From Haliotis rufescens (Eukaryota), in assembly GCF_023055435.1 (NCBI RefSeq), contig NW_025963846.1:22320001-22384000 (forward strand): DNA of 64,000 nt, written 5' to 3'. The translations under genes were made by a program, and so were the position numbers. Shown here piece by piece: positions 9,111-52,900 of this stretch (position 1 is the first letter of the stretch; every line of letters starts with the position of its first letter). Under the pieces are notes generated by a model that saw only the letters and a list, made by a program, of their open reading frames with translations, was not told the origin of the DNA and made no database searches.

Positions 9111-10337
9111 AGACAAAGCAGCACAGGGCTGCTGGATCTCAACGAAAGAAAGACCCGAATCTCACACTTATAGACATGCACTTTCTGGATGTTGGTATGA
9201 CTTGAATGATCAACCTTCATGTGAACATGTGGCATCTACATCTTCCAACACTCAGGCCTGGCACCATCTTGCATGAGCGAGCGAGCGACCAGCCACTAGG
9301 ATTACACTGTAGGTCTACCAGCCACTTGATGCCTCCCCACTTTGATCTCTGAGTTCGCAATCTTCATACTGTGCATGACATGACAGCTTCAAAACTTCCC
9401 CTATATTTCCTGACGAAACCTATCATATACTTCACTGCAGTGTCCCTGTGCTACGACATTAATATTCAGCTCAATTATGTCTGGATACAAGTACACTTAC
9501 CAAACATTAACACTGATGTCAAATGTTCTACAGTTACCATTATTTCTCAAAAACAGAGTGTCCTTTTCAGCTCTTCTGGTCATCTTTGGTTGACAAAGAA
9601 AGGTTCAACACACTATGTTCACTATCATCATCCAACAGTTGTCCAAACACATGTCTTCTCCTCAGTCTTGTCCACCTTCTCCAAATAAGTTTCAAAAGAA
9701 ACTATGTTACTTCAAACATGTGTAATGTCCTGGAGAATGCTTCATGATATTCCTGCAGAACATGATGTTGCTTATTTCATCTTGACTATAAGAATCTGCA
9801 AAGGAAGTAAATGTAGACATGTTCCGATGGGAGGGAGTGACGATTTACATATTATTATTAAACAGCTCTCTGAAGAGATGATGTGATGTGGTCAGTGGGA
9901 TCACCTCTTTCTAATCTTTAGCATGGCTCTGTTTTGAGAGTTGATCTTCGTCCATGTTTATTCATGATCATCTGTCAAGGATGTCCATCAATCCAAATGA
10001 ATGATATCCTACATTTACCTGATCAAAATGTTGATCCGAACTTCAAAAACTCATGTCACACAGGATCAACCCACTACAGCTCTGTATTGCATCCTGTCCC
10101 CAACCCGGGCATCATTTACCTTCCTCTGGCCTCTCTTTCAACAGTATGGACAAAGAACAAGAAGTTCCCACCGTTCACATACTGGAAATGTCAGTCAATA
10201 ATATAACCAACACAGTCATCTTTCTTCAGCTGAGTTCTCACACATTTGCATAACTACTCATTCACAATAGCAGTCCCTACCCATAAATTCTCCTTGGTTC
10301 CAAATTATAAGGCACAATCAAACATAATATTCCAACA

Positions 10338-11783
10338 TTATTTCTTCCCATTAGCTTCTTTCGTTCTACTGCTCTTCTTCTCAACATCCTTCGGTTTGCC
10401 CCTCTTCTCAACCTCTTTCAACTTTCTCTTCTTCTCATCAACCTCCTTCAACTTGCTCTTCTTCTCCTCAAGCTCCTGCAACTTCTTCCGAGCTTCATGA
10501 TGAGACTCCTCTAGCTTTTCCATCAGGCTGTCTGTCCATGCCAGGAACTTCTTGATGCTATCCACTTTCTGCGCATCGTACTTCATCATCAAAAAGTCTG
10601 GAGGCTTATCGATAAATGATGCAGCTTGCTTGGTGTTTTTGGATGAACTAGCTGACTCAGTTCTCTTGTCTTGAGCTCTTCCATCACTAGATTTTGACTT
10701 TGGTTTTGACTTTTCGTCAGTCTTGATTGAAGAGGTGGTCTTCTTACTAGACTCTTTCTCTCTTGATGTTCCAGCAACACTTTTTGACCTAGAAGGTTGT
10801 TTCTGGTCAGAATCTAGAACAGGTTTTCGGGCAAGTTGAATTTCAATCTTTGCTTCACGCTCAACATTACCTGGGTCCAAGAAATCGGGATTATGTCTTT
10901 CTCTGATGAAAGTCCTAGTTAAAGCATCATCCAGAATGGGGTCATAATCCTTCACTTTGTGTTCAGTGATCATGTGGTATCGAATCTCGGGCTGATCCTT
11001 ACATCCAATGCTACAGTATGGGCAGCAAAAATAATTTTCCATCAATACATGTTTTTCTTGCCAGTGACGATGGAAAGCCGATTTCGGACCCTGGAAATAA
11101 CAAGCCATCACTTTGCACATGAATTTGGCAGATGGGGTTCTGAATTCCTCCTCATCTTCATCAGAACTAATCCTCTCAGCACCAGCAACTGTATGTCCAC
11201 TCATACCACCATGAGTACGAATTCCATGGCCTATTCTGAAATGTTCAATCAGCTTAATCTTCCGGACAAAATGGATTGAGCACACAGGGCATGACAGGAC
11301 ATTGGTCGACTCGAGATGCTTCGAATTCCAATGTTGCAAGAAAGAAGCCGATGAGGCAGCAAATGAACATTCTTTTTCTGGACACTTGTACACCTTGAAG
11401 GGATTGTAACTTTCTGGTGCAGTGGGATCACTCTTTCCAAAAATCTCCACCATAGCTTCTTTTTCATCACAACAAGGGTCTACATAATAAGGATTGTGTC
11501 TCGACTCCACCTTGACATTCCCAAGGATATTATCCATGGTTCCTCCTTCATCGGTGACACCATGGCCATATATCAAGTGGGTTCTCATCCCCCTGCGGTC
11601 TGCACATCCTGTGTCACACACCGCGCAGATGAGGAAGTTGCAAAAACTCAAATGGATTTCCTTCCAGTGGCGACGGAATTGCTGCTGTGTTCCCTGGAAG
11701 CCACAGCGATCCACACTACAGAGGAACATTGGCCCAGGGTCCTCCTCCTCAGAGCTGATGTCATCATAAAGGGTCGATAATTT
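10338..11783 (-). CDS. Terminal zinc-finger exon of the downstream gene
   Basis: ttacag|KLSTLYDD...; three C-x4-C..HW-x3-H plus C-x2-C..H-x4-H units; KFLAWTD helix; Lys/Glu tail; ORF 10338..11849. Confidence 0.85.
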   Translation of the reverse strand, partial: KLSTLYDDISSEEEDPGPMFLCSVDRCGFQGTQQQFRRHWKEIHLSFCNFLICAVCDTGCADRRGMRTHLIYGHGVTDEGGTMDNILGNVKVESRHNPYYVDPCCDEKEAMVEIFGKSDPTAPESYNPFKVYKCPEKECSFAASSASFLQHWNSKHLESTNVLSCPVCSIHFVRKIKLIEHFRIGHGIRTHGGMSGHTVAGAERISSDEDEEEFRTPSAKFMCKVMACYFQGPKSAFHRHWQEKHVLMENYFCCPYCSIGCKDQPEIRYHMITEHKVKDYDPILDDALTRTFIRERHNPDFLDPGNVEREAKIEIQLARKPVLDSDQKQPSRSKSVAGTSREKESSKKTTSSIKTDEKSKPKSKSSDGRAQDKRTESASSSKNTKQAASFIDKPPDFLMMKYDAQKVDSIKKFLAWTDSLMEKLEESHHEARKKLQELEEKKSKLKEVDEKKRKLKEVEKRGKPKDVEKKSSRTKEANGKK

Positions 11784-14700
11784 CTGTAAGTACATTACAC
11801 ATTGCACTGCAATGATCCAAAGGTGGCTTGAACCATATCTGCAACTCATGTAAAATCATAACAGGACGACGAGAATCAAAAACTTACCAACCACATTCTA
11901 ATTTCATAATCTGTTTTGAGTGACAATCAGTTGTCCAAACTGTACTGCAATATTACAAAGTAGAGTTAGTGAGTATGGTTTTATGCTGCTTTTAGTAATA
12001 TTCAAGCAATATCACAGTGGGGGACATCAGAAATGGGCTTCACGTATTTGTATCTGGTTATAAAAGTGTTCATTGTGTTCCGGACTTAAGTTTGTAATCC
12101 ATTATAGTACTTTTCTCCAAGATTTCATTTAATTTTGTTTACATTAATTTCGGCGAAATCGTGCATGACCTGATCGGCAAATCAAATCAACCCACCATGA
12201 ATTCACCTTGAAATGAGGATTTGTCGTTAGAGGTAGCAAGTCTTCCTATCACTGCATTGTAATTTCTTTTCATTTATGATATTGGCCATGGATGGATGGA
12301 TGGATGGATGGATGGATAGATAGATAGATAGATGAAAATGTGTGAACAGCTGATTGTTATTTCCGGCTTTTTACACAAGACAAATAAACATGTAATCTTA
12401 ATCTTTGCAACTCAAACATTGTCCGGCATACAGTACACAAATACCATTGAATTTGTATATCATCATGTCATGTTTTATAGGCAAAAACAAGCACACAACT
12501 GCTATTGCTGCCTTGATCATAACAGTTGATGCGCAGTAAACCAGTGCACATGTCATGATGTAGACGGAAGTAACATTGGATCACATTGTTTTTAAATATT
12601 GTAGCATTTCACTGGTGTCGTGTTCAAGATTTTTAAAAATAAATTGGAAATAAAAACTAAACATCCGCCAAATTTTATTGTGATACAGGTGGTGCCGGAG
12701 AACAAAGACTATTATTTTTTTCCGGCTACATGCATACACACAACCACTCATGTCACAAATCAGGTGAAGTTGAGCAAAATTTGGTCGCAGGGTGTCCTTG
12801 GATGGGTGACCATGTTTTGGCAACTTGGCTTCTGAGAGTTTCTAGAGCTTTGGTCCTGCCCCACACTGAAGCACGTGTACCACATGTGGCGTCTCCTTGG
12901 ACAAGTGACTTTGTTCAAAATGTGCCTCTGTTTACCCAGCAGTGAATGGGTACCTGGTAGGATGATATGGCAAAGTGGTTGTTAATCTCCTAGCGCCTAA
13001 CAGGCAGCTTGGGTTGTGTACTCCCCAGGGAGCTGAGAATGATTCTAGAGTGCACATTGATCCTGTGACCGAGGTAGTAATATCTTTGAGCATGTCCCTT
13101 TGTGGTGTGGAAATATGTGCAATATAAATAGCCTATTATAAATGCCGCTTTGAACAAGAGTTCAGTAATGTGGGCATGGTGAAATGGGGTTTAACCTCAA
13201 GTTCAAGATTTATTGCACTTACAGAGTGACCTGCATGCACATGTGCGGCTGCTTGTACTAGTCAGAACTAGAACACAGTTGTGTGGAAGGAACACCAGAG
13301 TGAAGCAGGTATTAGACGTGTACTACTTTGGTGATATCCATGATCACTGGTATTGTGCTGACAATCCTACAAACATCATCTGGTCAAACTGGGGTTTGGA
13401 CCTATGAACATAGGTCATAGGACTCAAGTCTGTTCTAGCCATTCGGCAAGTTGGATGAAGCGCAGCCAATCAAGTTACGTTTTGGTGTCACGTGTTTTTT
13501 GTTTACATATAAGCTTGAAACATGGCTTCTTCTGCTGCATTCCCACATATTAGTGCCCGGCTTGCAAATCTTTGGCTGGACTTTCAATAAATAATCGTCA
13601 AAAGTTTCCCTTCCGATGCAAAAGAAAATTGTAAAAACACTGTTAATCCTCAATCAGCAAAACTTTCAAACAAAAATATATGATTTTCAAAAACCAATCA
13701 TCCAATCATACTGATCAAAAGAACTTAGGGAAAACTCAATTTTTTTCAAATGACTACAGTTAATCTATCATTCTTATAACTGCTGGACAAAACAGTCCTG
13801 TCTCTTATACAATAGCACACACATCAAACGTCTTCAGAAGCAAGGTGATAACTTTCTTCAGAAAAAGCCATGTCCTCCTTCGTTCCCAACTCTTCACTAT
13901 TGCTGTCATGTCTCCAATACAGTAACGCACTCATCAAGCGTCTTCAGCAGCGAGGTGATATTAATCTTGAGATAAGGCCATGTCCTCCTTGGTCCCAAAC
14001 ACTTCACCATTGCTGGACAAAAACAGTCATTTTTCCAATACAATAATGCACACATCAAACGTCTTCAGCACCAAGGTGATATCAATCTTCAGAAAATGCC
14101 ATATCCTCCTTTGTCCCCAACTCTACAACTGCTGGAAAAAACAGTACTGTTTCCAATACAATATTGCACACATCAAACGTCTTCAGTTAGCAAGGAAATA
14201 TCAATCTTCAGATAAAGCCATGTACTCCTTTGTCCCAAAATCTTCACCATTGCTGTCATGTCTCCAACTCAGTAACACACACATCAAAAGACTTCAGAAG
14301 CAAGGTGATATCTATCTTCAGATAAATATTTAACGTCAACGCCAAAGAATATGTAGTCTTGATTAGTGGTGAAAATTATATGACAAGTATCACAGAAAAT
14401 CAGTGATGCCACCAAGTTTTCGCAAGCCATGTCCTTCTTTGTCCTCTTCAACATTGCTTGACAAAAACAGTCCTGTCTCCAATCAATAATGCACACATCA
14501 AATGTCTTCAGCACCAAGGTGATATCAATCTTCAGAAAAAGCCAAATCCTCCTTCACCCCCAACTCTACCATTGCTGGACAAAAATAGTCCTGTCTCCAA
14601 CCGATAATGCACAAATCATACATCTTCAGCACCAAGGTGATATCAATCTTCAGAAAAAGCCAAATCCTCCTTCGTCCCCAACTCTACCATTGCTGGACAA

Positions 14701-17700: not shown

Positions 17701-20700
17701 AGTCAATCAAATTACAGTTGTGTTATGAATTTTAGATTTTGACGAAATCTTTTTGTTTATCCTGCCATTCTGAACATCTTAAGCAGGAAATCGCAATTTA
17801 TATTAAAAATATGGTGCTTTGTTGATGTATCATGCTAGGTTACGAGCTGTGACAAAGTTTTTTCATGCATAATTTTGGCATTAAACATCGTGTCCGAGCC
17901 GAGAATTTAGGCGACGAAAGCCGATGTCATTTGATTTACATTACAAGCGATCGCACGAAAAGATGGAAATAATAACTTGGCAGTAAGTTTAACAACTTTT
18001 AGATATATTTTTGTTGATTGTATCTATAACTTTGTATACTATATTCAAAGCTTTGCTTGAAACGTCTTTATTATGCTCTTTGACATGTTCGATGTGGACC
18101 CGTTTTCGAAGTGCGTGTCTGAGATTTTTATTTTAAATAACATTACGGGAAATAGTGAATAATTTCTTAATCTATTGATAAAAAATGATCAATTGAAATT
18201 GAATACGTATTTCAGACATTGTGAAATGTGATAGATTTAGTAAATGAAAGATATGACTGGTAGGTTTAAAAAATTATATACTATTTTGACGTGACTACGG
18301 CTTGGCCGGTAGGGCCTATACCGGCCTACGGTGTCTGGGAATGCTTCTTGGCCGGTATTACGGGCCTACGGTGTTGAATGAGTAATAATGATTAATCATA
18401 AGCAAGTTCAATTTGATTATGAGTTTTCATTGTGTGTCAGTACATATCTGTCAAATGTGGTGGTGGTTGGTGGTTAGTTGTTTAACGCCGCACTCAGCAA
18501 TATTCCAGCTATATGACGGCGGTCTGTAAATAATCGAGTCTGGACCAGACAATCCAGTGATTGACATCATGATTGACCACCCAATTGGGATCGATGACAT
18601 GCATCAACCAAGTCAGCGAGCCTGACCACTCGATCCCGTTAGTCGCCTTTTACGACAAGCAAAGTCACCTTTTACGGCAAGCATGGGTTGCTTAAGAACT
18701 ATTCTACCCCGGATCTTCACGGGTCTCTATCAAATGTGGATTGTTTGAACCATGCTGGGTGTATTTGCCACACAGGAGGCAACGGTTACTCACCTCCGTA
18801 AACTTAACAGGATTAGAAAAAATACGATTTCCCCTGATTCGGAAATGCTTGGTGACAGCATTTGCTGCCTCGCTGGCCTTGTTGAAGGACACAAATCCAT
18901 ACCCCTTCGACCTGATTCAACAGAAGAAAGTGATTGGTGTCAGTCAGCTCTCAGAAAGGTGGTGAGGTGAAGTTGGGTTTAACGCCGCATACAAGATTAT
19001 TGCACTTTTATAGCGATGTGCAGGCACGTGTGGGGGGGGTGGGGGGGCTTGATTGTACTAGTCCGGACTGAGATACCATACCGCAGTTTAACATGAATAC
19101 CCCACTCAGACACAGTATACTGACTCCGAGCCGACCAGTCCTTGTTTTAGCCCCTTAATGCCGAGCGCCAGACAGGGTAAAAACAAGTACCATCGTTTAA
19201 CGTCTTTTGGTATGACGCGACCAGGGATCCAACCCAGGACCTTCTGCTCTCCGGGCAGACACTCTACCACTAGACCATGGAGGCAGTCACTCTCAGAAAG
19301 TATCATGCATTTAATATGAACACTTAATTGACACACTTCTCATGAAGCCATACAAAAAACAACAACATGGCAGCCTTAAATGACATTGTGTGAATGGGGC
19401 ACAAAATGAATTAGGTCTTAGATAAATGAGAGTGCATTGGGCGTAAAGCTGTTTTGAACAGTATTCCAGTTATATCACAGCGTGTCAGCTTGATGTGGGA
19501 GGAAAGCCCGAAGAGATACAGGTTTTGAGATGTTTACCACTTTGGTAAAACCCACTAGCATGGGTGTGGTGCTGACAAACCTAGAAACATTATAAGGGCA
19601 AACAGTATTCGAAGCCACGATCAGAGGTCTCTGGTGTGCGCAAGGGACACAATTCTGCACATTAAAGCACCTTACACGAAATTATCATTCATTTAATATC
19701 AACACTTAACCGACACACTTCCAAATCAAATCATACAAAAGAAAACACTAACTTAACACACTTGGCAGACAGTGTTCAACATGAAGCACGAGAGTCATGG
19801 GGTCCTTGCTATTGCACCAATGTTAAAAGGTTTACAGTCCATTAGGAATTGCATTGGACCCGGACATTTCTCAAAGTACATGTTAAAGTATATTTTTTTG
19901 CTTTTGTTCTTGTCTGTATCTTCATTTCTCAAAAAACCTACTATGGTTTAGTACACTTAAAATTCTTATTTTATCATTTAGACAATGTCGGACATCTTGA
20001 ATTCAATATGTCCACCATAATAGAGGCTGAGGCAAATGGCGTTTAGCTTTCATGACGTCAGTTTGACCCTGGGTCCTCAGAATGAATACCATTGGAGCAA
20101 ACCTCAAGGACCCCAGGACCCATGGACCCTCCTTAGTTTAAAAAAGTACGGGCAGCGCACATTTGAGCTGAATGTTTGTTGAACACCACACTCAAGCTTT
20201 ATTCAAGCTGTATGATGGTGGTCTGTAAATGATGGAGTCTGGATCCAACAATCCAGCGATTCTTAGCATAATGAGTGAGTTTGGTTTAAAACTGCTTTGG
20301 ACAGTTTTTCAGTTCAATCACTGCATCTCATCTCAATGTGGGGGGAATGCACCCAGTGATGCAGGTGGTAGATTGTTTGGTTGGTTGGTTTGTTGTTTAA
20401 CGCCGCACTCAGCAATATTCCAGCTATATGACGGGGGTCTGTAAATAATCGAGTCTGGACCAGACAATACAGTGATTAATATCATGAGTATCGATCCACG
20501 CAATTGGGATCGATGACATGCATCAACCAAGTCAGCGAGCCTGACCACCCGATCCATGCCTTAAGACATCCACAGATTTACCTTTTACTCCCTCGCTTGA
20601 CAACGATGTTGGCAAACATAACCTTTCCACATTCTGAGAAGGTGTTGTACAGATCTTCAGCTGACGTGTCCATAGCTAAGTTAGACACATGGATCCTCTT

Positions 20701-26700: not shown

Positions 26701-29700
26701 ATCTGCACATTGAAATCGAAGAATATTTCGTTATGCTATTTTGATTGGACTTGTTAGTCCAGCCAAAATATAACTCCATAATTTCAGTCTAATTTCGGCT
26801 AGGTTGGAAACTGGACTTTTAGAGTCATTTAACTCTCTTGCCTTGGGAAGATGCAGTGTTCGCGTTAACGCAGAAACCTGCATTTTTCACGCATTAAAAT
26901 CATATAAACACGCAAAAATATTTTGCATGCGTCTTTTGCACGCACAGATTGTGTTATACTTAATTCTGTATTAATACCATAAAAACAAAAAACTATTCAA
27001 AGCTGATAGCCTGCTTACAATGTTCAGACGAAAATAAATCAAAACCTGGAAATTCCCATTGCTAAAAATAGAATGTGACCAGATGGCGCTTTGAATCGCG
27101 TGCTTTATATTTCAAAAAATTTTCTTTGGGCAACAGAATAACTAATCTCAGACACAGGACGTCATTCGTTACTATCGATGGAATTCCCCAGAAGTCGTTC
27201 GTTTCATCCAATCAGAGCCCAGCTTACAAGTAATAGTCGGTAATACGAACGATCATAAACAGAGCGACGGAAGAAAACTTCCACACATGGGCATGTGCTA
27301 ACAACAGTCATATTTATTCTATTAATGATAGAGCGTTCATTATATCAAAACTGGACCGTAAGTTAAAGCTTGGTCATAATTATTAGCTGTACTAGTACTG
27401 ATTTTATTGAAATAAAAACTTCACACGTGAAATATTTGAATTGAAAATTTATTATTTCATTTCTGCACGCACTGTACAAAAACCTACCGCGAACACTGAA
27501 GATGGCTACACGTATATGACAGCTGTCTGTAAATAATCGAGTCTGCACCAGACAATCCATCCAGGACATGCATTTGCCAAGTCACAGAGCCTAACCTCCC
27601 GATCCAGTTAGATCCTCTTATGACAAGCATAAGATGCTGAACACCAATTCTAACCCGAGACTTCACGAGGCTCGTGCTAAGAAATGGATGGCAGGAACCA
27701 ATGGACTAGTGATTTTTGGATAGCAGCACAAAAGACTAACATACACGCCATGATAAGCTTACGTGAAGCTTTGGTCCAGATGAGCAAAAATGATAACGCT
27801 TAGTTTTACAACACCATGTCTGATTTTGTTTTCATACCTGTCTGGTACGTTTCTTGCCCTTCCAAATGCAGCTTGCCCAACATCTTCACTGTAGCACATC
27901 TTTTTACTAGGCTCTCCATCTCCTTCGTCTCGCATACTGCGTGGACTATACCGGTTTTCTTCTCTCTCAACAATCTCCTCGTCAGAATCTCTTGCTTTGT
28001 GATGGTAATCAAATACCGCCATCTGTTGGGCTGGCAGGTTCTCAAGATCACCCCCTCTCTCTGAGATATAAAGAAAATAATGTACCATGATGTACAGCAT
28101 GCTCTAAATCTTTTCTTTGGAAAATTCATAATACCAGTGATCAGGAGTGGGGGTGGGGGGTGGGGGAAAAGAAAGGGATTGGTCAAAGGACTTAGGACAA
28201 CAATAACAATAACAATAACAACAACAACAACAACAACATCAACAACAGGCAAATTATATTGCGCATATTGCTGCACCACACAGGGGATTGCTCAAAACGC
28301 TATTATTACACCGGTCACTGGATCAGTGTGCTCTCAACAATCATTCTCAGCTCCCTGGGGAGTATACAACCCAAGCTGACTGTTAGGTGCTAGAAGCTTA
28401 ACAACCACATTGCAATCACATCCTACCGGGTACCCATTCACTGCTGGATGAACACAGGCACAAGGAGACACCACATGTGGAACATGTGCTTAAGTGTGGG
28501 GCAGGACCGAAGCCCTAATAACTCTTGAGGAGCCAAGCTGCCGAACACGGTCCCCATCCAAGGACTCACCGCGTACGCCGTTGCTTAACTTCACCTGCTT
28601 TGTGACCTGTGAGCTGTGCATAGGACCACGTGCCGCCACGTATCATTTTGTTTCTGCCACCTCCTACCCCTCATACATGTACATGAACACTTGTCAATGA
28701 CACGCACGGACAATGGTTCCAGTTCCTAAATAATGTTTCAAATTTCTAACTTTATTGTTTGTGCCACCTCCCCTGCACACCCAAGGTGTGAAAATGTTTG
28801 CTGTGTTTTCCCTCCTCATCACACCGACAAGCCCTCCCTAATAATAATAAATTACCAGTCCCTGAGGTGGTCTTGATATACTCCAGGTTTTCTGTTATAT
28901 TGACAGACTTAAATATAGTGCGCTGCAGACTGTGCCAAAAACATTTGAGTTTATTTGATTATAATTGTATCTTGGCAGTATTTGCAGTAGACTTAGTTCT
29001 TTGCATGTGGACTTGCATCAGCTGATCTTGTTTGTTTGTTTGTTTGTTTGCTGTTTAAAGCAATATTCCAGCTACATGATGGTGGTCTGGACCGGACACT
29101 CCAGTGACTGACATCATGAGCATCGATCCACGCAGATGGGATACGATGACATGCATCAACTAAGTCAGCAAACCTGACCACCCGATCCCGTTAGTCGCCT
29201 CTCACGACAAGCATTGTCGCCTTCTACGGCAAGCATGGGTTGCTGAAGACCTATTCTACCCCGGATCTTCACTGGGTACACTGTTACATATCTGTCTTAG
29301 CCTGGTCTGTTCTGAGTATTTACTTCCATGTTATCAATCACACTGGGTATGTGTAGGTTTCTTTGGATAGTCAAAATGTTCGAGTCTGTTGGGTATTTAT
29401 GAACCAATGATACCCATTTAATATAATTTTGCTTAAAATGCTGTCTTCAATTTGTGTAGTATTCACTGCAGCAGAATTCATGTATGTGTGATGCCTGCTT
29501 CTTATCGTATTACAGTATTTAAATAAACAACAAGTGGGAGTTGTTTATCGTACAATAAAACACTGCAGATACTTTTACACCAGACTGTAACTCTCCACGA
29601 AAGAGAAAGAGTAAGCTAGGGTGAGTGAGTGAGTGAGTTGGGTTTAACGCGCTTTTAACAGTATTCCAGTTATATCACAGCGTGTCAGCTTAATGTGGGA

Positions 29701-30454
29701 GGAAAGCCCGAAGTGATGCAGGTCTCAGACGTTTATCACTTCGGTGAAACCCACGAGCACGGGTATGGTGCTGACAAACCTAGAAACATAATCGGGGCGA
29801 ACCGGGATTTGAACCCACAATCATAGGTTTCAGGCGTGCCCAAGGGACGCAACTCTGCACAGCGAATCACGGCGCCTTAGACGACTGGGCCACACGTGCC
29901 CCCAGTAAGCTAGGGACATCATGTGATTAAGTTGCGCAGGTATCAAGCAATGCACAGACCATTGTTAGTGATAGTAGCCATGGTAACAGCTGGGGTGTGT
30001 TTGTGCTAGGTGTTTTTTGATGCTGGAAAAGCCATTTGGGGGATCATATCCACACAAGGATCGAGAAAAAAGAAGATATGCACATTGTTAGATAGGAAAC
30101 GTCTTAAAAAATATAGTTTTCAGCATGCTAATCACCGGTTAAACTAAACATATTCTACTGGCACTCACCAAGTCTCCTCTTACGAGGCATTCTGTCCAAG
30201 TGAGGATTTCTATCCGGAGACTCCCTGTCCATGTCATCCCCCTTCCAGTACCCAGTGTCTCTCTCACTGCTATTGTTAAGGTTCATATGATCTCGTCTCA
30301 TCATAAAGTGCTTCCCTTGCCGAGCTTGATCTGGAGGTCCAGCCATTACTGGGAACATACTGCCCCTGGGCACTGGTATGGTGGCTGTGTTAGGAGATGG
30401 ACCCATCATAAAGTTTACACCAGGCCTGGGACCTGGAAACCGGTTAAAGGCCAT
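10338..30454 (-). CDS. Uncharacterised RNA-binding/zinc-finger protein (RD repeats, RanBP2 finger, RRM, 3 paired-C2H2 modules, C-terminal FLxWTD coiled coil), ~1246 aa
   Basis: Exons (minus): 30454-30169, 28060-27838, 25293-23889, 23009-22952, 21178-21129, 20736-20582, 18911-18794, 11783-10338. GT-AG, intron phases 1,2,0,1,0,2,0; total 3741 nt open to TAA. The junction 18794->11783 is inferred from phase only. Confidence 0.78.
13760..15950. repeat. Intronic ~119-120-bp satellite, about 12 well-conserved units (14450-15950) plus degenerate units
   Basis: Unit gcacacatcaaacgtcttcagcaccaaggtgatatcaatcttcagaaaaagccaa...ccaatacaataat. Confidence 0.92.
18470..18725 (-). mobile_element. SINE-like family B (~240 bp, no tRNA head, (CAAA/CAAC)n tail), representative copy
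   Basis: Begins gacccgtgaagatccggggtagaat; flanked by tcaaatgtgg duplication. Other copies near 1605, 2000, 2805, 3275, 20380, 23385, 27500, 29030, 31290, 42180, 59215 (-) and 37480, 38645 (+). Confidence 0.85.
18794..20736 (-). CDS. RRM of the downstream gene (two exons: 20736-20582 and 18911-18794)
   Basis: RNP2 RIHVSNL ... EDLYNTFSECGKV; RNP1 SKGYGFVSF; phase-2 junction is consistent. Confidence 0.85.
21636..21870. repeat. 40-bp tandem repeat, 5 copies plus a degenerate one
   Basis: gtgaggttttactttttccaggtaggacctcatcc(t/c)ggat. Confidence 0.92.
22462..22810. mobile_element. Tc1/mariner-type MITE (TA TSD)
   Basis: ta|ccgtatttgacataataag...cttattaagtcaaatacgg|ta. Confidence 0.78.
22952..23009 (-). 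CDS. RanBP2-type finger micro-exon of the downstream gene
   Basis: ttttcag|CGLNNFISRLKCYKCKKFR|gtaagt completes W-x-C-x2-C-x3-N-x6-C-x2-C. Confidence 0.85.
23889..25293 (-). CDS. Large Arg/Asp/Ser-rich exon ending in the first half of a RanBP2 finger (WKCVG)
   Basis: 1405-nt open exon, ttcag acceptor and GGG|gtatgt donor; corresponds to ORF 23844..25253. Confidence 0.85.
24362..24645 (-). repeat. Coding 18-bp tandem repeat, (RDSR[L/Q]D)n, about 16 copies
   Basis: tcttgaatctctatct(a/t)g repeated. Confidence 0.95.
25422..25582. other. Assembly gap (N run)
   Basis: N run adjacent to a SINE A copy. Confidence 1.
26011..26158. other. Assembly gap (N run)
   Basis: N run adjacent to a SINE A copy. 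Confidence 1.
26532..26853. mobile_element. MITE-like element with ~30-bp imperfect TIRs
   Basis: catcttccctaggcaagggagttaactgact vs agtcatttaactctcttgccttgggaagatg. Confidence 0.65.
28250..28640 (-). mobile_element. SINE-like family E with a 5S-like promoter segment and a Deu/Nin-like core
   Basis: gaagttaagcaa...ccttggatggggacc followed by ccagcagtgaatgggtacc core. Other copies near 12760-13130(+), 39610(-), 40700(-), 42680(-). Confidence 0.6.
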
Positions 30455-46900: not shown

Positions 46901-49900
46901 ATCTCTGCTATAAGCTAGTATTCCTTATAAGTCAGTTTGATATGTTAATGGTGATACCATGGCATCTGTCAGTTATCTACTCCTTTTTTTCTAGTTCCAT
47001 GAGCTGTCTTGATGCCTTTTCATTTGCCTGCTCAAGAAGAATTAGGTATTCATCCGTCCAGGACAAAAAACATGTCAGTTCTTTCTCTGTCCTCCCCATT
47101 CTTGGAAGCCGTATTGATGGATGAGCAACCTCAATGATCCGTGGACGTTTAGGTGCCCGGCTTTTTCTGCTACCTTTTGGCTCACCACTGGAGTAATCAT
47201 CTTCAGTGGCTGCTAGCGCTTTCCCAGCTTCCTTCACCTTACTGCTTCGTCTTGACTGCCTGGATGTCTGTCCACTCAAAACAGTCCTTTTCTTAGTCCC
47301 CTTCTCCTTGGGACCAATGCTTCGTTGACTGCTAGATTTAGTGACATCCTTTGTTATTACTGCTGTTTTCTGATTTGCCTTGGGACCAATGCTTGGTTGG
47401 GTGCTAGGCGGAGTGACAATCTTAGTTAATACACCTGTTTTCAGCTTCTTCTTTCCCTGTGAATCAACACTTGGCTTCCTGCATGGCTGCCGACCAACTA
47501 ACACAGATGTTTTCCGACTTTGTGTTGGCTGCCTGTATGACTGTTGACCAACTAAAACAGACATTTCCTGATTTCCTGTTATCTTCGGATCAATGATTAA
47601 TGCACTATTATCTTCCTTCTCCAAGGAACTCGTGACAACACAAGCACCCTTTGTGACAGACAAAACACTTGATCTGTTCGCTGACTTTGTGGCACTGCTT
47701 GAGGAACATGCCTCACTTTTAGTCAAATCGCTTTCAGCTTCTTTAACATGAGCAGAAATGACGTCTGTAATATCAGTCTTTTCAAACTTGTCCAAACCTA
47801 AGATTTCTTGCGTGAAAGGACCTGGATCTATGAACTGTTTGTTTGGAATACTTTGAGTTTCTAAACACATACCATCAATAATATATTGTGTGTAATTGTG
47901 CTCTTTTTTCATATGTAGTTTGAGAACATTTTGATCAAGTACAATCTCCATGCAATCAGGGCAATTATACATTAATTTTTTAAAGGTGTGTATATTATTC
48001 CAATGATCCCTATAAGCCTTCTGTGTAGTGACAACATAGTTGCAGTTTGGTATTGGGCACTTTTCCATTTCCAATATTGACTGTTTCCGTAGGTGAATAG
48101 AAGACTCATTAGAAACTGCTTCAGTCTCCGGAAAACTTTTCCCTGTCATCTCCGAAGTTCCAGCAACAGTGCTACTCTGGGCAGTCTTAAATTGCCTAGC
48201 ATCAGTAACTACATTTTCAGACACACTTGCTTTTGAAGCATCCTCGTCACGGTTTGAGGGAAGCTTGTCAATGACACTTGAACTTTTCTCAGTTGCAGCC
48301 GTCTCTCTCCAAGATTCTAAACCCAACATCTCCAGAGTATAAGAACCTGGATTCATGAATATATTGTTTGGAACTTGGTGCATTGTGAGGTCCATGGTTT
48401 CTAGTTGTTTTATTTTATACTCGTGCTGCTCTGTCATGTGTTGCTTGATAACAAGTAGATTATTATAAGTACTGCTGCACTGTGAACACTTGTACACTTG
48501 ATGCATTTCCTGATGTTTCTCAACCCAGTGTCTCCTGAAGGCATCCTGACTTGTGATAGCATAGACACATTTTTGTACTGGGCAAATTCCCCGTTTTCTA
48601 AAGGAATGCCACACAGCATTAGATGAGGGTTGAGTTCCTTGTTGAGTTCCTTGTTGAATTGCTGGTGGAGTTGCTGGTGGAGTTGCTTCTTGAGTTTCTG
48701 GTGGAGTTTCTGGTTGAGTTGCTGGCTGAGTTGCTGGCTGAGTTGCTGCTTGAGGTGGTGATTGAGGTTTTGCTTGAGGTGTTCGTTGAGTTGCTGGTCG
48801 AGTTGGTTGTTGAGTTGCTGGTCGAGTTGGTTGTTGAGTTGCTGGTCGAATTGGTTGTTGAGTTGCTGGTCGAGTTGGTTGTTGAGTTGCTGGTCGAGTT
48901 GGTTGTTGAGTTGCTGGTCGAATTGGTTGTTGAGTTGCTGGTCGAGTTGTTGGTCGAGTTGCTTGTTGAGTTGCTGGTCGATTTGCTGACTTGGTTGTTG
49001 AAACCTTAGGTTTGTTTCCCATTACATGTTTGACTGGTTGTGGTGGAATATAAACAGTGTTGACTTGGATTAAATTGGGGTTGCTGTGCTTCTTCCGCTT
49101 TGTTTGTCCTGAAAATACTGGTGTGCTTTCAACCATGGCTGGTGGTTTTCCTTTTACCCCAGCATCGCCTTTCACTTGGGTCTCAGGAGCTTGTACCTGC
49201 AACACAAAGAGAAGACACTTTAGTGAGCTGGAAAATGAGTGTGTGTGCTCATTAAGTGAAGGATTGTAATGACATTGACCATACAACTCACTGAAGTTCA
49301 CCTACAGGCACGAATCCTATATCAATGCAGAGGATCAAAGAGAACATTTGTAGAAATATTTGCACACGAGATAAGTTAGGTAGGTAAGTAAATTATGCAA
49401 GAAAGGTACAGCCACACACATTTGGAATTTAGGGCAACAACGAAAATGTTCAGTCCTGAGTGGGTGAACATTGAGTGAGTTGGGTTTAACGCCGCTTTTA
49501 ACAGTATTCCAGTTATATCACGGCGTGTCAGCTTAATGTGGGAGGAAAGCCCGAAGTGAAGCAGGTCTCTGACGTTTACCACTTCGGTGAAACCCACAAG
49601 CACGGGTATGGTTGCTGACAAACCTAGAAACATAATCAGGGCGAACCGGGATTCGAACCCACAATCATAGGTTTCTGGCGTGCCCAAGGGACGCAACTCT
49701 GCACAGCGAATCGCGGCGCCTTAGACAACTGGGCCACCCGTGCCCCCAGGGTGAACATTGCTTATAGTCAGTCAGCAGTATTCCAGGAATTATATAAATC
49801 TGGGTGAGGAAGACCAGCGACTGTAGCAACAAGAAACAATCAATGTTAACAATAATAAGCCAATAGCCAAGACACCTCACAGCACATACTGGGGTCGATT

Positions 49901-52900
49901 TGACTGCTGGCCCATTGGCCTGTGGCCAGTTAAAATTACAAAGGGCTTGCTGAAATGTAAAGTAAATGGCCCGTCTGGCTAGTCAAAATTTCATCCCTAC
50001 TCGTGTATGTTTAATGTTATTAATTGGATCGTCTCAGTAGGATGACAACTGGCTGACATTTTGTAATGTTGTGTACAACGACTACTTCATCTGCTTATAT
50101 AGTGCCATGAAATGAGGCAAATGGAAGCCAAAAGTTAATCTTAGAGTGCAGAGAAAAACGTTTTAGGCATGAGGAATTCTAAAATTTTCAAAGCCCTGCT
50201 AGCTGGCTACGTGACCTCAGGTACGGCCATTTCGTGGCCTCTACCATGTAGTTGTAGGCCAGTTTGGAGAAGGGCCAGTAACATTTGAAAGGAGCAAGCC
50301 CTGCTGGCTACACACAAATTTGTTGTTAAATCTACCCCTGCACATAGGTTGAGCGAGTTAAAATTTAACGTCCCATCGCCAATATTTTAACTATAAAGCA
50401 ATCCTGCACATAGGAACTGTGCCACATGTGAGGTGAGGTGAAATTGGGTTTAACGTCGCATCCAAGATTATTGCATTTATATAGCGACGTGCATGCACGT
50501 GTATGTGTGTGTGTGGCTGCTTGTACTAGTCCGGACTGATGCCGATTTATAGTGCTAGCTCACTGAGATACCATGCCGCAGTTTAACATGAATACCCCAC
50601 TCAGACACAGTATACTGACTCCGAGCCGACCAGTCCTTGTTTTAGCCCCTTAATGCCGAGCGCCAGACAGGGTAACAACAAGTACAATCTTTTAACGTCT
50701 TTTTGTATGACGCGGCCCGGGATCGAACCCTGGACCTTCCGCTCTCCGGGCGGACGCTCTACCACAAGACCACGGAGGCGGTCTGTGCCACATGTACCAA
50801 ACATGCATATGTCCCTATTACTGCTTCACATACCTTCACTGGCTGAGGACACACTGTATTTCCAGGATCTACATAGGCCTTGTTCTCCCTAGTCTCAGAT
50901 TTCGACAGTTTCAGCAGCAGATCATGTTGCTCCCCCTTGATCCCGTGGACTTTACAGATGTGTGCTGTGAAAGCATGTTTGGAAGGGTAGGCCTTTTTGG
51001 ATCGCTGAAACTGACACTTGGGGTGAGGACAGCTGTATGTAGTGATGGTGGGCTTGTGGACGCTTGACCAATGGTCCCTCAGTTCTACCCATACAAGTTC
51101 AACACTGCAGCTGCTTACTGGGCAGGGTACCTGCAAGAAACAAAGCTGTTCATTGTACTTCCTCATCAAATATTAAACACCGATCAAGGCCTCAAAGTTT
51201 AATTTTTTTTACAAAGAAGCCGTATGGCTACAAATATTTTTTTCCAGGTAGCCAGTGGTAAAATCAAGAAGTCAAGCCAATATTGTAGGTAGCCAAAGGC
51301 ATTTGAAATTATCTTTTATCAAATAACTATTATAACATGCATAACACTAAGTCATAACACCAGTCTATCCAATGAGCTAAAATACTAATCAACGTACATT
51401 AATATATATGTATATCTGTTCATTGTCGACTATAGGAGGTATTATACGCGAGTACAATTATCAGCAGATATTTTTTCCACAATCAGCTGTTATTTATTTT
51501 TGTGTCTTCAAATGCAAAGCAATAGAATTTAGTCGCCACAAGATATTTTTCATAGTAGTCATTTGGCTACCTCTGAATTTTAGACAGTAGACATATTGAA
51601 ATTTAGGTCGAATTGGCGAACGTTTTAGTCTCAACTTTGAGGCCTGTGATCTTTGATGATGCTAATACTTCCTTGTCTGTTACGAGGTACCACAAAAGCA
51701 ATAGGGCAAATGGAATAGAATAACATCTGTCTTTAATAGAGTTGTAAAAGATTTAACCATCACCGAAAATAAACAAATTCTCATAGGAATCTGAATAATT
51801 TCATTACACTCTCTTGAGCTAATAAAATATTTCAGTTCTATCTACTTCTAGTTCCAATGGCTTTGTTATGAAACATCAAGACGCAAGTCATTGTACATAC
51901 CTGCCATGTTCTTTCTTCAATCATTATCTTCCACACTTCCGCTTCTGAACCCGCGCATAAAAGTCACAAAATGACATCGTATTTCGTCTGTTTCTGACAG
52001 AATACCTCATCCCATCGAAACAAAGTAGTAAAAGACTGACACTTTCAACAATTCTACTGGTAGGGTACACTAGGGGTTTTATATCTGCAAGTTCCAGTTT
52101 TGACCTGGAAACATCTTTATAAACAAAGGTTCAACGTCTAAAGCTTCTAAGTATGTACAATGACAAGCTTAGTAAAATCTGAATACTTTTTACATTTGGA
52201 TACTTTTTCTACATTACTACCTTAATGCTAGTACTGCTGTTTTTTTACTTCGGAGACGGAGCTGTAAGAGGTGCTGGCTACAGAAGTTGTTGTACCCACT
52301 AGTTGTGTGGCTTCCTTCCTCCCGGGGATATGCTGGACAATGAACCTCATGTGTAGTCGATCCACTAATTGGAAGTGAGTGAGTGAGTGAGTATGGTTTT
52401 ACGCCGCTTTTAGCAATATTCCAGCAATATCACGGCAGGGGAAACCAGAAATGGGCTTCACAAATTGTACCAATGTCAGGAATCGAACCCGGGTCTTCGG
52501 CGTGACGAGCTAACGCTTTAACCACTAGGCTACCCGACCGCCCCACTACTAGAAGTACTGGAAGATCTGAGATAGCAGGGATGATGAGTGAGGAGTTCAC
52601 AGGTTGCACAGACACCAGGCAACTGGGATGTGTCTGTGGAAATGGCAAGTATTTGGTGCTGATGCCGGGACTACCAATGAGACAGTGATGAGTTCTAATT
52701 CTAGATTGTTTATGTGCCATCAGAGTCGAATGTTTGACCACAGCCTGGAGGCAGTCCTTCAGATGAGCCCACCAGCCGTCATGATGCGTCAACCAACAGG
52801 TGGAGGGAAGGCTTGAGCACTGTCAAGGAGACATCATCACAGAAATCTTACTGTCCACCAATGAATAAACAGGGCCAGAAACATCTGTAGTGGACGTAGT

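What the first reader, a model, noticed from the sequence alone, without database searches (positions are those of the whole stretch)
10860..11730. Unrecognised repeated domain: paired C2H2 with invariant HW and an NxFxDPG cap
Six copies across two genes share C-x4-C-x11/12-HW-x3-H, a linker of about 8 aa, C-x2(4)-C-x12+-H-x4-H, then about 20 aa later N-x2-[FY]-x-[DN]-P-G ([47 protein letters not shown]; the middle copy in the downstream gene lacks the cap). There are no TGEKP linkers, so this is not a Kruppel DNA-binding array. The conserved cap suggests an ~85-aa single fold, perhaps binding RNA or protein (inference). I do not recognise a named family.
Basis: partly seen in the sequence, partly recalled or inferred. 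Interest (0 to 1): 0.75.

Follow-up and report, generated by a model that had tools for sequence, protein, structure and literature searches.

The report
Capped double zinc-finger module in abalone
Six copies of a conserved ~90-residue unit, made of two ordinary zinc fingers plus a fixed short "cap" motif, sit at the ends of two abalone RNA-binding-type genes, and the same uncatalogued unit recurs in giant mollusc proteins and in an extra gene of a jumping-gene (retrotransposon) family.

Summary
Six units lie on the minus strand (about 0.02 expected per shuffled window). Three are in the terminal exon of gene A (10338-11783). Three are in gene B (exons 50834-51130 and 46977-49196), which spliced RNA contigs join in 3 of 4 runs.

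The unit is two classical-type C2H2 fingers in fixed register, an invariant aromatic residue (usually Trp) after the first His, a variable tether of 10-29 residues, then N-x2-[YF]-[IV]-[DN]-P-G.

No family in the local Pfam copy covers it. None of 15 single capped units is shown reaching a cutoff, and a protein with 17 units matches nothing at E<=1e-5. One open caveat: accession PF26218, absent from the local copy, is recorded on one relative.

New here:
- The window ORFs are 3' exons of RRM proteins.
- The unit recurs up to 17 times in large proteins; all six named relatives are molluscan.
- It forms the core of an ORF3 inside Ty3/Gypsy LTR retrotransposons of this genome.

AlphaFold gives a confident ordered unit, only partly reproduced on ORF3. 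No solved or viral fold covers it.

The most likely role is an RNA/RNP-associated zinc module, but this is inferred, not shown. The scan's notes hold no earlier record of this unit on other DNA.

The parts
10338..11783 (-). Gene A terminal exon (KLSTLYDD... to the stop). It encodes three units plus the C-terminal FLAWTD helix and a Lys/Glu-rich tail.
   Evidence: Acceptor ...cttacag| lies before 11783. The junction VKFTE|KLST matches the H. rubra protein P0023.
11424..11735 (-). Gene A unit 1 (fingers plus cap NPYYVDPC, with Gly replaced by Cys)
11175..11399 (-). Gene A unit 2 (finger pair with HW, no cap). This is the stretch that gives the Pfam zf-Di19 match.
10830..11132 (-). Gene A unit 3 (fingers plus cap NPDFLDPG at 10869-10892). 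This is the sequence modelled by AlphaFold.
10413..10622 (-). Gene A C-terminal tail with the F-L-x-W-T-D amphipathic helix, shared with gene B and other host paralogs
   Evidence: F, W and two L columns invariant in 5 host tails
18794..18910 (-). Gene A exon piece encoding the second half of an RRM (ends ...NPVKFTE)
   Evidence: tblastn of P0023; Pfam RRM_1 positions 38-67, 18.7 bits
20584..20736 (-). Gene A exon piece encoding the first half of the RRM
   Evidence: tblastn of P0023; Pfam RRM_1 positions 2-33, 24.8 bits against cutoff 20.7
27792..30286 (-). Span holding the two 5' exons of gene A as mapped by P0023 (30176-30286 and 27792-28061)
   Evidence: tblastn, 65% and 47% identity. The exon ends were not refined.
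50834..51130 (-). Gene B unit exon (VPCPVSSC...CPQPVK). It encodes one complete unit with cap NKAYVDPG.
   Evidence: Acceptor ttgtttcttgcag|, donor GTGAAG|gtatgt, RNA contigs, unit
49197..50833 (-). GT-AG intron of gene B, removed in the RNA contigs
   Evidence: X1 record 3, X2 record 14 and X6 record 24 join 49193 to 50831. The boundary is ambiguous by the shared letters GTA; the GT-AG placement comes.
46977..49196 (-). Gene B terminal exon: a Pro/Thr/Gln-rich repeat, two units (48306-48599 and 47781-48074), then the FLSWTD tail (46980-47144) and the stop
56312..56403 (-). First-half OCRE exon of the surrounding RBM5/10-like gene. It is the candidate donor exon for gene B's unit exon.
   Evidence: Pfam OCRE, 44.3 bits against cutoff 24.7, positions 1-28 of 52. 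It ends ...TCA CAG|gt in phase 0, which fits the 'cag' overhang of the contig and the phase-0 start at 51130. The link itself is inferred, not seen.

Best explanation
What it is (well supported). The six repeats are copies of a conserved 85-95-residue zinc module. It has two classical-type C2H2 fingers in fixed register: C-x4-C-x11-14-H-[W]-x3-H, an 8-residue non-TGEKP linker, then C-x2-C-x12-H-x4-H. A tether of variable length follows, then the motif N-x2-[YF]-[IV]-[DN]-P-G. Each unit should bind two zinc ions.

Where it sits. In this abalone genome (Haliotis rufescens, from the one named hit), the window's two ORFs are the 3' terminal coding exons of RRM-type RNA-binding protein genes. Gene A has an RRM, three units and a C-terminal amphipathic helix. 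Gene B has three units and the same helix, and is most likely spliced onto the RBM5/10-like gene that surrounds it. The same module forms long arrays in large mollusc proteins. It is also the only confidently folded part of an ORF3 that lies between pol and the 3' LTR of a group of Ty3/Gypsy retrotransposons.

How it most likely works (inferred). The finger pair is a rigid zinc-held platform. The extension after finger 2 (a short helix, a strand and the cap) folds back on it, and the invariant aromatic residue and the cap act as fold-defining residues. Variable surface residues would give each unit its own target. In the RRM proteins and in ORF3 the module would add contacts to RNA or to a partner protein of an RNA-protein complex, and the C-terminal helices would bring copies together.

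My odds: a real conserved module distinct from catalogued families, 0.9; RNA/RNP-associated role, about 0.45.
For: Reality and definition: six window units against 0.02 expected. All eight ligands, W, N and P are invariant in 15 host and retrotransposon units. Over 184 complete units: C7, C12, H25, H30 and C39 in 184 of 184; W26 in 163 (F 19, Y 2); P88 in 182; N82 in 147; H-x4-H in 184; N-x5-P in 182.

Classical fingers: profile positions 5-65 match CTCF (E 5.7e-15), TFIIIA and Tramtrack.

Ordered extension: AlphaFold mean pLDDT 85.6, pTM 0.63, helix 65-72, strand 75-80, block 81-90 at 88. The same order of elements appears in the ORF3 model.

Not catalogued: no whole-unit Pfam match. No solved or viral fold at E<=0.001. 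Best Z is 5.8, over residues 31-79 only.

Gene context: P0023 maps exon by exon. RRM_1 is found on gene A's own exons. Spliced contigs occur in 3 of 4 runs, with canonical splice sites.

RNA link: RRM_1 in P0023 and P0054, in P0129 with 7 stretches at E 1.9e-82, and in one further protein. G-patch in P0028. OCRE half-exon upstream of gene B.

Retrotransposon ORF3: gag with CCHC, pol with PR-RT-RNaseH-integrase, then ORF3, with LTRs found for one lineage. There are tens of matches, both intact and decayed.
Against: Function is inferred from context only; nothing here shows binding.

Of 31 representative unit-bearing proteins scanned, only 4 carry an RRM and 1 a G-patch, and 26 carry no accessory Pfam domain. 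Three of the four RRM cases are named Haliotis proteins, and the fourth is a member of alignment A6 that one search does not name.

The window's own units are near neutral (net charge -1 to +3), the paralogs on the same contig are -6, and no alignment column is consistently basic. That is weak support for direct nucleic-acid contact.

The tether to the cap varies from 10 to 29 residues. Capless units keep the HW. In the second, weak model (mean pLDDT 56.3) the cap is below 50. So 'one rigid fold' is not secure.

The 184-unit frequencies are inflated, because units were selected for end-to-end matches to the profile.

The link of gene B to the OCRE exon rests on phase and a 3-letter overhang, not on a seen junction.

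X5 holds unspliced pieces across both acceptors (records 18 and 20).

PF26218 could not be examined.
Confidence: 0.55

Rival explanations
1. Protein-protein interaction module. The finger pair is only a scaffold, and the conserved N-x2-[YF]-[IV]-D-P-G is a tethered short peptide motif, or part of a protein-binding surface, recognised by a common partner. Arrays of units would then be multivalent adaptors.
For: The cap has fixed internal spacing (N-x5-P in 182 of 184) but sits on a tether of 10-29 residues, as short linear motifs often do. No basic column is conserved, and the window units are near neutral. In the second model the cap is not confidently placed. Double C2H2 modules of the Di19/KCMF1 kind give weak matches.
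Against: The most conserved cap residues are hydrophobic or turn-forming (Y/F, I/V, P, G), as expected for a buried turn. No partner is known.
Confidence: 0.25
2. Sequence-specific DNA-binding fingers. The units read DNA as tandem C2H2 fingers do. In ORF3 they would steer the retrotransposon to particular DNA or chromatin, and in the host proteins they would couple transcription and RNA processing.
For: The closest sequence and structure matches of the finger pair are DNA-bound tandem fingers: CTCF, Tramtrack, TFIIIA, Kaiso and ZBTB48, the last two with a C-terminal extension. Mean unit charge is +2.7, and 94 of 184 units are at +3 or more.
Against: The units are separated by long, low-complexity spacers instead of forming a contiguous array. 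There is no TGEKP linker. No column at the usual base-contacting helix positions is conserved or consistently basic. The domain partners that were found are RNA-related (RRM, G-patch, OCRE). The structural Z-scores are low (5.8 or less).
Confidence: 0.15
3. Nothing special: ordinary divergent C2H2 fingers in fast-evolving lineage-specific genes, with the 'cap' an accident of recent tandem duplication within these two genes.
For: Gene A and its H. rubra relative P0023 are only 57% identical, so the genes evolve fast. Generic C2H2 proteins fill most of the 46361 profile hits.
Against: The cap and HW are kept between units that are only 19-38% identical. They are also kept between gastropod and bivalve proteins and between host genes and retrotransposon ORF3 lineages that are themselves only about 30% identical.
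Confidence: 0.03

Closest known systems
Classical tandem C2H2 zinc fingers (for example CTCF fingers with H-x4-H and non-TGEKP linkers; Tramtrack; TFIIIA)
   Same: Same ligand spacing and beta-beta-alpha fingers, two in tandem. There is a significant profile match over positions 5-65 (CTCF E 5.7e-15), and the model superposes at 2.5-2.8 A over 57 residues.
   Different: The new unit has an invariant aromatic residue (W) right after the first His, an 8-residue linker without TGEKP, and a C-terminal helix, strand and N-x2-[YF]-[IV]-D-P-G cap. None of the 60 listed best stretches reaches the cap. Units are spaced by long linkers rather than packed in an array.
Pfam zf-Di19 (PF05605), the double C2H2 module of Di19/KCMF1-type proteins
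   Same: It is a 54-position model of two consecutive C2H2-like fingers. It passes its cutoff on the whole gene A ORF (35.9 vs 27.5 bits), on P0023 (28.6) and on P0020 (42.9). KCMF1 chains appear weakly in the solved-structure search (E about 1e-4).
   Different: It covers only the fingers, not the extension or cap. Single capped units do not reach its cutoff (3 of 15 at E<=0.01). Gene B (14.9 bits) and the ORF3s (14.8 or less) fail. The best match is the capless unit.
Zinc-finger domains with a structured C-terminal extension (Kaiso/ZBTB33, ZBTB48 ZF10-11-C) and the archaeal-virus finger AFV1p06
   Same: Fingers followed by an extra ordered element that adds to the fold. These are the only rows that reach beyond the two fingers: Kaiso over model 1-84 at Z 4.2, ZBTB48 over 3-86 at Z 3.5, and AFV1p06 over 31-79 at Z 5.8.
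   Different: All Z values are below the level the tool calls meaningful (below 8). There is no sequence similarity in the extension, and those proteins are DNA binders with different architectures.
Accessory ORFs of Ty3/Gypsy-type LTR retrotransposons (C. elegans Cer1 CERV; the varied ORF3s of bdelloid rotifer elements)
   Same: An extra protein beside gag and pol. CERV is needed for export of the element's genomic RNA and has a leucine zipper and a Cys-rich region (PMC10309623, passages read). Bdelloid elements capture assorted ORF3s that are shared with other gene contexts (PMC5408684, passages read).
   Different: No sequence relation. CERV comes from a spliced 5-exon mRNA, not a 3' ORF. 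The bdelloid ORF3 types named in the passages are env-like, GDSL, DEDDy, coiled-coil and transmembrane, and 'zinc' and 'C2H2' occur 0 times in that main text.
RBM5/RBM10-type splicing regulators (host gene context)
   Same: RRM exons lie upstream of gene A's units. An RRM exon and an OCRE half-exon lie upstream of gene B.
   Different: In gene A the units and a C-terminal helix stand where, from my recollection of RBM5/10 (checked by no call), OCRE, a single C2H2 finger and a G-patch would follow.

Membership tests
Classical C2H2 zinc finger (Pfam zf-C2H2 / zf-C2H2_4 kind) | Ligand pattern C-x2-4-C-x12-H-x3-5-H | tested here: met
   Finger 1: C-x4-C in 177 of 184 and H-x4-H in 184 of 184, with a spacer mostly of 11-14. 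Finger 2: C-x2-C in 160, x12 in 128, H-x4-H in 161.
Classical C2H2 zinc finger (Pfam zf-C2H2 / zf-C2H2_4 kind) | Significant sequence similarity to known C2H2 fingers | tested here: met
   The unit profile against solved chains gives CTCF E 5.7e-15, TFIIIA 1.4e-11 and Tramtrack 7.1e-8, over profile positions 5-65. Single units against the Pfam finger models stay below cutoffs (best E 1.7e-4; 6 of 15 at E<=0.01).
Classical C2H2 zinc finger (Pfam zf-C2H2 / zf-C2H2_4 kind) | Beta-beta-alpha fold around zinc | tested here: met
   Prediction only. The model has E4-5, E14-15, H17-27 and E43-44, H47-57, and superposes on Tramtrack and CTCF pairs. Zinc binding itself cannot be tested here.
Krueppel-type DNA-binding array | Consecutive fingers joined by TGEKP-like 7-residue linkers | tested here: not met
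   The linker is H-x8-C (135 of 184; x7-x9 in 175) with no TGEKP in any window unit. Units are tens to hundreds of residues apart.
Pfam zf-Di19 (PF05605) | Whole-protein score at or above the gathering cutoff of 27.5 bits | tested here: inconclusive
   Met for the gene A ORF (35.9), P0023 (28.6) and P0020 (42.9). Not met for gene B (14.9), P0054 (26.2), the ORF3s and other paralogs (16.4 or less), or single capped units (3 of 15 at E<=0.01).
Pfam zf-Di19 (PF05605) | The model accounts for the whole repeated unit | tested here: not met
   The model has 54 positions and aligns to the two fingers only (for example residues 154-209 of the gene A ORF). The extension and cap are outside it.
Pfam PF26218 (identity unknown to me) | Match of the unit to this model | not testable with these tools
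   It is listed as precomputed on P0022. It is absent from the local Pfam copy (error), is not shown in the Atlas rows, and occurs in 0 papers.
Ty3/Gypsy LTR retrotransposon (for the ~295-aa unit-bearing ORFs elsewhere in the genome) | gag with CCHC knuckle, and pol in the order protease, RT, RNase H, integrase | tested here: met
   Pfam on L034 and L040 ORFs: zf-CCHC; RVT_1 2.1e-32; RT_RNaseH 9.7e-29; Integrase_H2C2 9.1e-19; rve 1.6e-13; Integrase_p58_C 3.3e-10; Asp_protease_2 7.8e-5.
Ty3/Gypsy LTR retrotransposon (for the ~295-aa unit-bearing ORFs elsewhere in the genome) | Flanking long terminal repeats with the extra ORF inside them | tested here: met
   For one lineage: repeats at 3047-3256 and 11169-11376 (98.6%) of the joined C223 stretch. 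By comparison with the C46 copy, the 5' repeat extends to about 3997. ORF3 at 9611-10504 lies between the end of pol (9237) and the 3' repeat. No repeats were found within the 10 kb held for the second lineage.
Ty3/Gypsy LTR retrotransposon (are the window's genes A and B themselves element copies?) | Adjacent gag/pol and LTRs, with no host splicing | tested here: not met
   Genes A and B are spliced exons with canonical sites, joined to RRM-type exons. No gag/pol lies next to them among the listed ORFs.
RBM5/RBM10-like RNA-binding protein (host genes) | RRM domain(s) | tested here: met
   Gene A exons: RRM_1 at 24.8 and 18.7 bits. Upstream of gene B, the exon at 61930-62109 scores 23.2 bits.
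RBM5/RBM10-like RNA-binding protein (host genes) | OCRE domain | tested here: met
   Only for the gene around gene B: exon 56312-56401, OCRE at 44.3 bits, positions 1-28 of 52. It was not looked for in gene A.
RBM5/RBM10-like RNA-binding protein (host genes) | RanBP2-type finger and G-patch | not tested
   The RanBP2 finger is claimed by another first-reader note (s1-812887). Pfam on P0023 at E<=1e-4 listed only RRM_1 and zf-Di19.

The most novel reading that the evidence does not exclude
The capped double finger is a previously undescribed, mollusc-wide zinc domain that has moved between a retrotransposon and the host's splicing-factor-like genes. Either abalone RRM proteins domesticated the accessory ORF3 of a Gypsy element, or the element took a host RNA-handling module to manage its own genomic RNA, much as Rev or Cer1 CERV do. 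The shared layout (unit, spacer, terminal amphipathic helix) would then mark one functional cassette used on both sides of the host-element conflict.
Probability: 0.25. Interest if true: 0.75.

Novelty: new variant of a known kind. Interest (0 to 1): 0.55.

Why it matters
If it holds, this defines a new family-level domain within the C2H2 superfamily. The family has at least 30 representative protein clusters, and every named member is labelled 'uncharacterized', 'hypothetical' or given a misleading automatic name. That gives an immediate annotation gain for mollusc genomes, including farmed abalone.

The more interesting point is that host RRM proteins and a Gypsy retrotransposon ORF3 share the same module. 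Non-envelope accessory ORFs of animal LTR elements are poorly understood. A zinc module that also sits on splicing-factor-like proteins gives a concrete, testable idea: handling of unspliced element RNA, or competition for it.

It also corrects the local gene models. The two 'intronless ORFs' are terminal exons, and the 'nested gene' is probably an alternative 3' end of the RBM5/10-like gene.

Tried and rejected
Word-indexed homology searches found almost nothing. The gene A ORF found no hit. ORF3 found only its own annotated copy. P0022 found only itself. The tool's length limits and its need for shared words probably explain this, so the three blanks say little.

Homology between the host tails (FLxWT...) and the ORF3 tail looked plausible by eye, but profile-profile comparison gave probability 0.13 and E 0.45. 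I do not claim it.

The unit tree (184 rows, 102 columns, quick search) left 95 of 180 inner branches open. Types 1 and 3 of the retrotransposon units form a clade (99), but their attachment to host units has support 74-84, and type 2 is unplaced (support 2). So the direction of transfer is not resolved. I did not run the one-clade test.

The ESM Atlas look-ups returned only generic or unnamed finger clusters.

Structure searches gave no whole-unit match: Foldseek on PDB, VIA-align wide and BFVD.

Charge analysis did not discriminate RNA, DNA or protein binding.

Literature: five searches turned up no description of this unit or of a zinc-finger ORF3 in mollusc Gypsy elements. PMC6238403, PMC5408684 and PMC10309623 were read as passages only; the other papers were seen as search listings only. 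Supplementary files were not opened, and those of PMC6238403 may list element structures that bear on the ORF3 claim.

I considered and rejected the idea that genes A and B are themselves element copies (see membership test), and the idea that the motif is chance.
Full report
OBSERVATION. The window is AT-rich, intron-bearing animal DNA. A six-frame scan for C-x2-5-C-x10-13-HW-x3-4-H finds six matches on the minus strand. Three are in ORF 10338..11849 (503 aa), two in ORF 46977..49301 (774 aa) and one in ORF 50759..51169. A seventh, on the plus strand at 50786-50854, is antisense to that last exon and has no second finger or cap, so I take it as chance. Shuffled windows give 0.02 such matches. 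The cap N..[FY].[DN]PG follows four of the six units. The only correction is that the quoted coordinates hold three of the six units.

GENE MODELS. The 503-aa ORF is not an intronless gene. A Haliotis rubra protein found by the profile search (P0023, 'uncharacterized protein LOC124285035') maps onto the window exon by exon on the minus strand: 30286-30176, 28061-27792, 20736-20584, 18943-18794 and 11798-10347. The last exon begins after a canonical acceptor at 11783, reproducing P0023's VKFTE|KLST junction. The two exons just upstream match the two halves of Pfam RRM_1 when searched separately (24.8 and 18.7 bits). P0023 is only 57% identical in the last exon. So it may be a paralog's ortholog rather than the strict ortholog, but the architecture is the same.

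For gene B I laid contigs of four runs from two studies on 46900-52800. In 3 of the 4 runs one contig covers 48920/48939-49193 and continues at 50831 (X1 record 3, X2 record 14, X6 record 24). The fourth run (X5) holds separate pieces, including unspliced ones across both acceptors (records 18 and 20). The skipped stretch has GT..AG ends once the shared letters GTA are assigned, and the junction ...CPQPVK|VQAPETQ... is in frame. The runs are only guessed to be RNA by the tool, but the spliced contigs argue that they are.

X6 record 24 carries 27 more letters 5' of 51133 that do not lie on the stretch, and the unit exon has its own acceptor at 51130. So there is at least one further upstream exon. 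The nearest upstream exon of the surrounding gene (56403-56312) is the first half of an OCRE domain (44.3 bits). It ends ...CAG|gt in phase 0. That fits both the three extra matching letters of the contig and the phase-0 start of the unit exon. I therefore think gene B is an alternative 3' end of the RBM5/10-like gene rather than an independent nested gene, but the junction itself was not seen.

THE UNIT. Searching the window's own genome with the six-unit profile gave 53 matches. They include four long open frames elsewhere on the same contig, two exons on another contig, and a set of near-identical ~290-aa ORFs. A 15-unit alignment of window, paralog and ~290-aa-ORF units, which are 19-38% identical to the first, has as invariant columns all eight zinc ligands, the Trp after the first His, and the Asn and Pro of the cap, with the Gly conserved in at least 90% of rows.

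A profile search of 1.84 billion representative proteins returned 46361 hits at E<=0.001. Most are generic multi-finger proteins matching only positions ~5-66. A distinct set matches end to end (positions ~3-100) many times over.

Over 184 such units the pattern is C-P-V-x2-C ... These frequencies are inflated by the selection for end-to-end matches. Capless units keep the HW.

KNOWN FAMILIES. In the local Pfam copy, the whole gene A ORF passes zf-Di19 (35.9 vs 27.5 bits), with the best stretch on the capless middle unit. Gene B does not pass, and neither do the ORF3s. Scanned singly, none of the 15 capped units is shown reaching a cutoff; the best E-values are about 1e-4 (zf-C2H2_4 in 6, Zn_SUZ12 in 4, zf-Di19 in 3). 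P0002, with 17 units, matches nothing at E<=1e-5.

Against solved structures, profile positions 5-65 match ordinary tandem fingers (CTCF 5.7e-15), and none of the 60 listed best stretches reaches the cap. So the fingers are classical C2H2, and the register, the HW and the cap are what is new.

One caveat remains. The protein collection lists PF26218.1 on P0022. That accession is not in the local library, not among the Atlas rows shown and not in any paper searched. It may or may not describe this unit.

STRUCTURE. AlphaFold on gene A unit 3 with the 15-row alignment gives mean pLDDT 85.6 and pTM 0.63. After two beta-beta-alpha fingers (helices 17-27 and 47-57), with a long strand 31-36 leading into finger 2, come a third helix (65-72), a strand (75-80) and the cap. 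The 10-residue block 81-90 has mean pLDDT 88.

Foldseek against PDB and BFVD finds nothing at E<=0.001, and the best rows align about 60 columns of two fingers. The Foldseek-independent search gives Z 5.8 for an archaeal-virus finger over residues 31-79, and Z 4.2-4.8 for CTCF, Tramtrack and Kaiso. All are below the level the tool regards as meaningful.

A second model, of a whole retrotransposon ORF3 with a shallow 8-row alignment, is weak (mean pLDDT 56.3, pTM 0.29). It repeats the same order of elements in the unit but puts the cap below pLDDT 50. With the variable tether, this keeps open the possibility that the cap is a tethered motif rather than part of a rigid fold. I could not inspect coordinates or predicted errors.

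RETROTRANSPOSON LINK. The ~290-aa ORFs lie 300-400 bases downstream of an ORF that ends like an integrase. On two lineages the order is gag (CCHC knuckle), pol (protease, RT, RNase H, integrase; all Pfam-supported), then the unit-bearing ORF3. For one lineage LTRs flank the whole element, and ORF3 lies between pol and the 3' LTR; that 3' LTR is interrupted by another insertion in the copy examined.

Genome searches with two ORF3 lineages give 30 and 40 matches at E<=1e-10. Some are full-length without stops at 95-100% identity, and many are fragmentary or carry stops. The lineages are only about 30-42% identical to each other over nearly the full length. So ORF3 is an old component of this element group. 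ORF3 has an acidic N-terminus, one unit, a disordered basic spacer and two long C-terminal helices. The one database hit calls it an uncharacterized protein of Haliotis rufescens, which also names the organism.

CONTEXT AND FUNCTION. Of 30 representative proteins looked up, 6 have names, and all six are molluscan: Haliotis rubra, H. rufescens/H. cracherodii, Gigantopelta aegis and Sinanodonta woodiana.

Of 31 representative unit-bearing proteins scanned against Pfam, 4 carry RRM_1: P0023, P0054, P0129 with seven stretches, and one member of alignment A6 that one search does not name. One carries a G-patch (P0028), and 26 have no accessory domain. In this genome every host locus I could place in a gene model is RRM-linked. 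These are gene A, probably gene B, the locus on C235 whose units pair with P0054's in the tree (supports 99 and 96), and the 17.7-Mb loci that group with P0129 (support 98).

Charge gives no decision. The mean is +2.7 but the range is -9 to +15, the window units lie between -1 and +3, and no column is basic.

I therefore commit, at about 0.45, to an RNA/RNP-associated zinc module working beside RRMs, and in ORF3 on the element's RNA. A protein-interaction module follows at about 0.25 and DNA binding at about 0.15. The Cer1 CERV protein shows that Gypsy-type elements can carry an accessory protein for genomic-RNA export (PMC10309623, passages). That is an analogy only.

ORIGIN. The unit tree pairs gene A's units one-to-one with P0023's (support 99 for unit 3) and groups them with the seven-RRM family (94). 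It does not place the retrotransposon units with support. Tail homology between host proteins and ORF3 is not supported. Capture and domestication both remain possible.

VERDICT. Its function is unproven.

Noticed in passing
window 49461-49854, 50446-50839 and 52219-52612 (similar short ORFs at 8284-8454, 23638-23760, 52383-52505 and 53370-53492): A short interspersed repeat recurs through the window; its copies read [18 protein letters not shown]...GIEPGSSA in one frame. It collects enormous summed contig depth in all four runs (10^5-10^6 against about 10 on the exons) and produces most of the spurious joints and loose ends in the read-laying output.
   Followed up: no
window about 13870-16000, plus strand: A long tandem array gives overlapping ORFs that repeat ...HTSNVFSTKVISIFRKSQ(I/V)LLRPQLYHCWTK..., with strong negative GC skew (-0.37 for 14001-16000). 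It looks like a satellite rather than a gene.
   Followed up: no
window 52975-53361 and the duplicated blocks 53417-53803 / 53826-54146, minus strand: A reverse-transcriptase-like fragment (…[28 protein letters not shown]…) is followed by two near-identical copies of a short block. This is the debris of another retroelement inside the same intron as gene B. It is unrelated to the ORF3-bearing element.
   Followed up: no
window 3413-3880, minus strand: A 155-aa ORF ends ...RGRIGLQQPMLAVRGRPTG, which resembles P0023 residues about 128-140 (…RIGLQQPMLVIRN…). This may be a 5' exon of a third paralog lying downstream of gene A and running off the window. The resemblance is by eye only.
   Followed up: no
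window 23844-25253, minus strand, and the N run near 25.4 kb: A 469-aa open frame is rich in Arg, Asp and Ser, with many DRDSR(L/Q) repeats. It lies between gene A's mapped 5' exons and its RRM exons, next to an assembly gap (309 N in the window). P0023 has no counterpart, so it may be an extra exon of gene A.
   Followed up: no
P0004 (Sinanodonta woodiana, hypothetical protein), units at residues 685 and 978: Two units of this bivalve protein are the nearest neighbours of the abalone retrotransposon units of types 1 and 3 (support 84). The same protein gives an odd Pfam match to I-HmuI_NUMOD-like (6.6e-12).
   Followed up: no
L031 3404-7744 (genome contig C46): One ORF3-bearing Gypsy copy is split by a nested insertion that carries a 1447-aa open frame on the opposite strand, so another retroelement sits inside it.
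   Followed up: no
P0013, C-terminal end: This six-unit protein from an unnamed source ends with ...RGLPGVGKTRLSRYM, which looks like the start of a P-loop NTPase motif. No Pfam family was reported at E<=1e-4.
   Followed up: no
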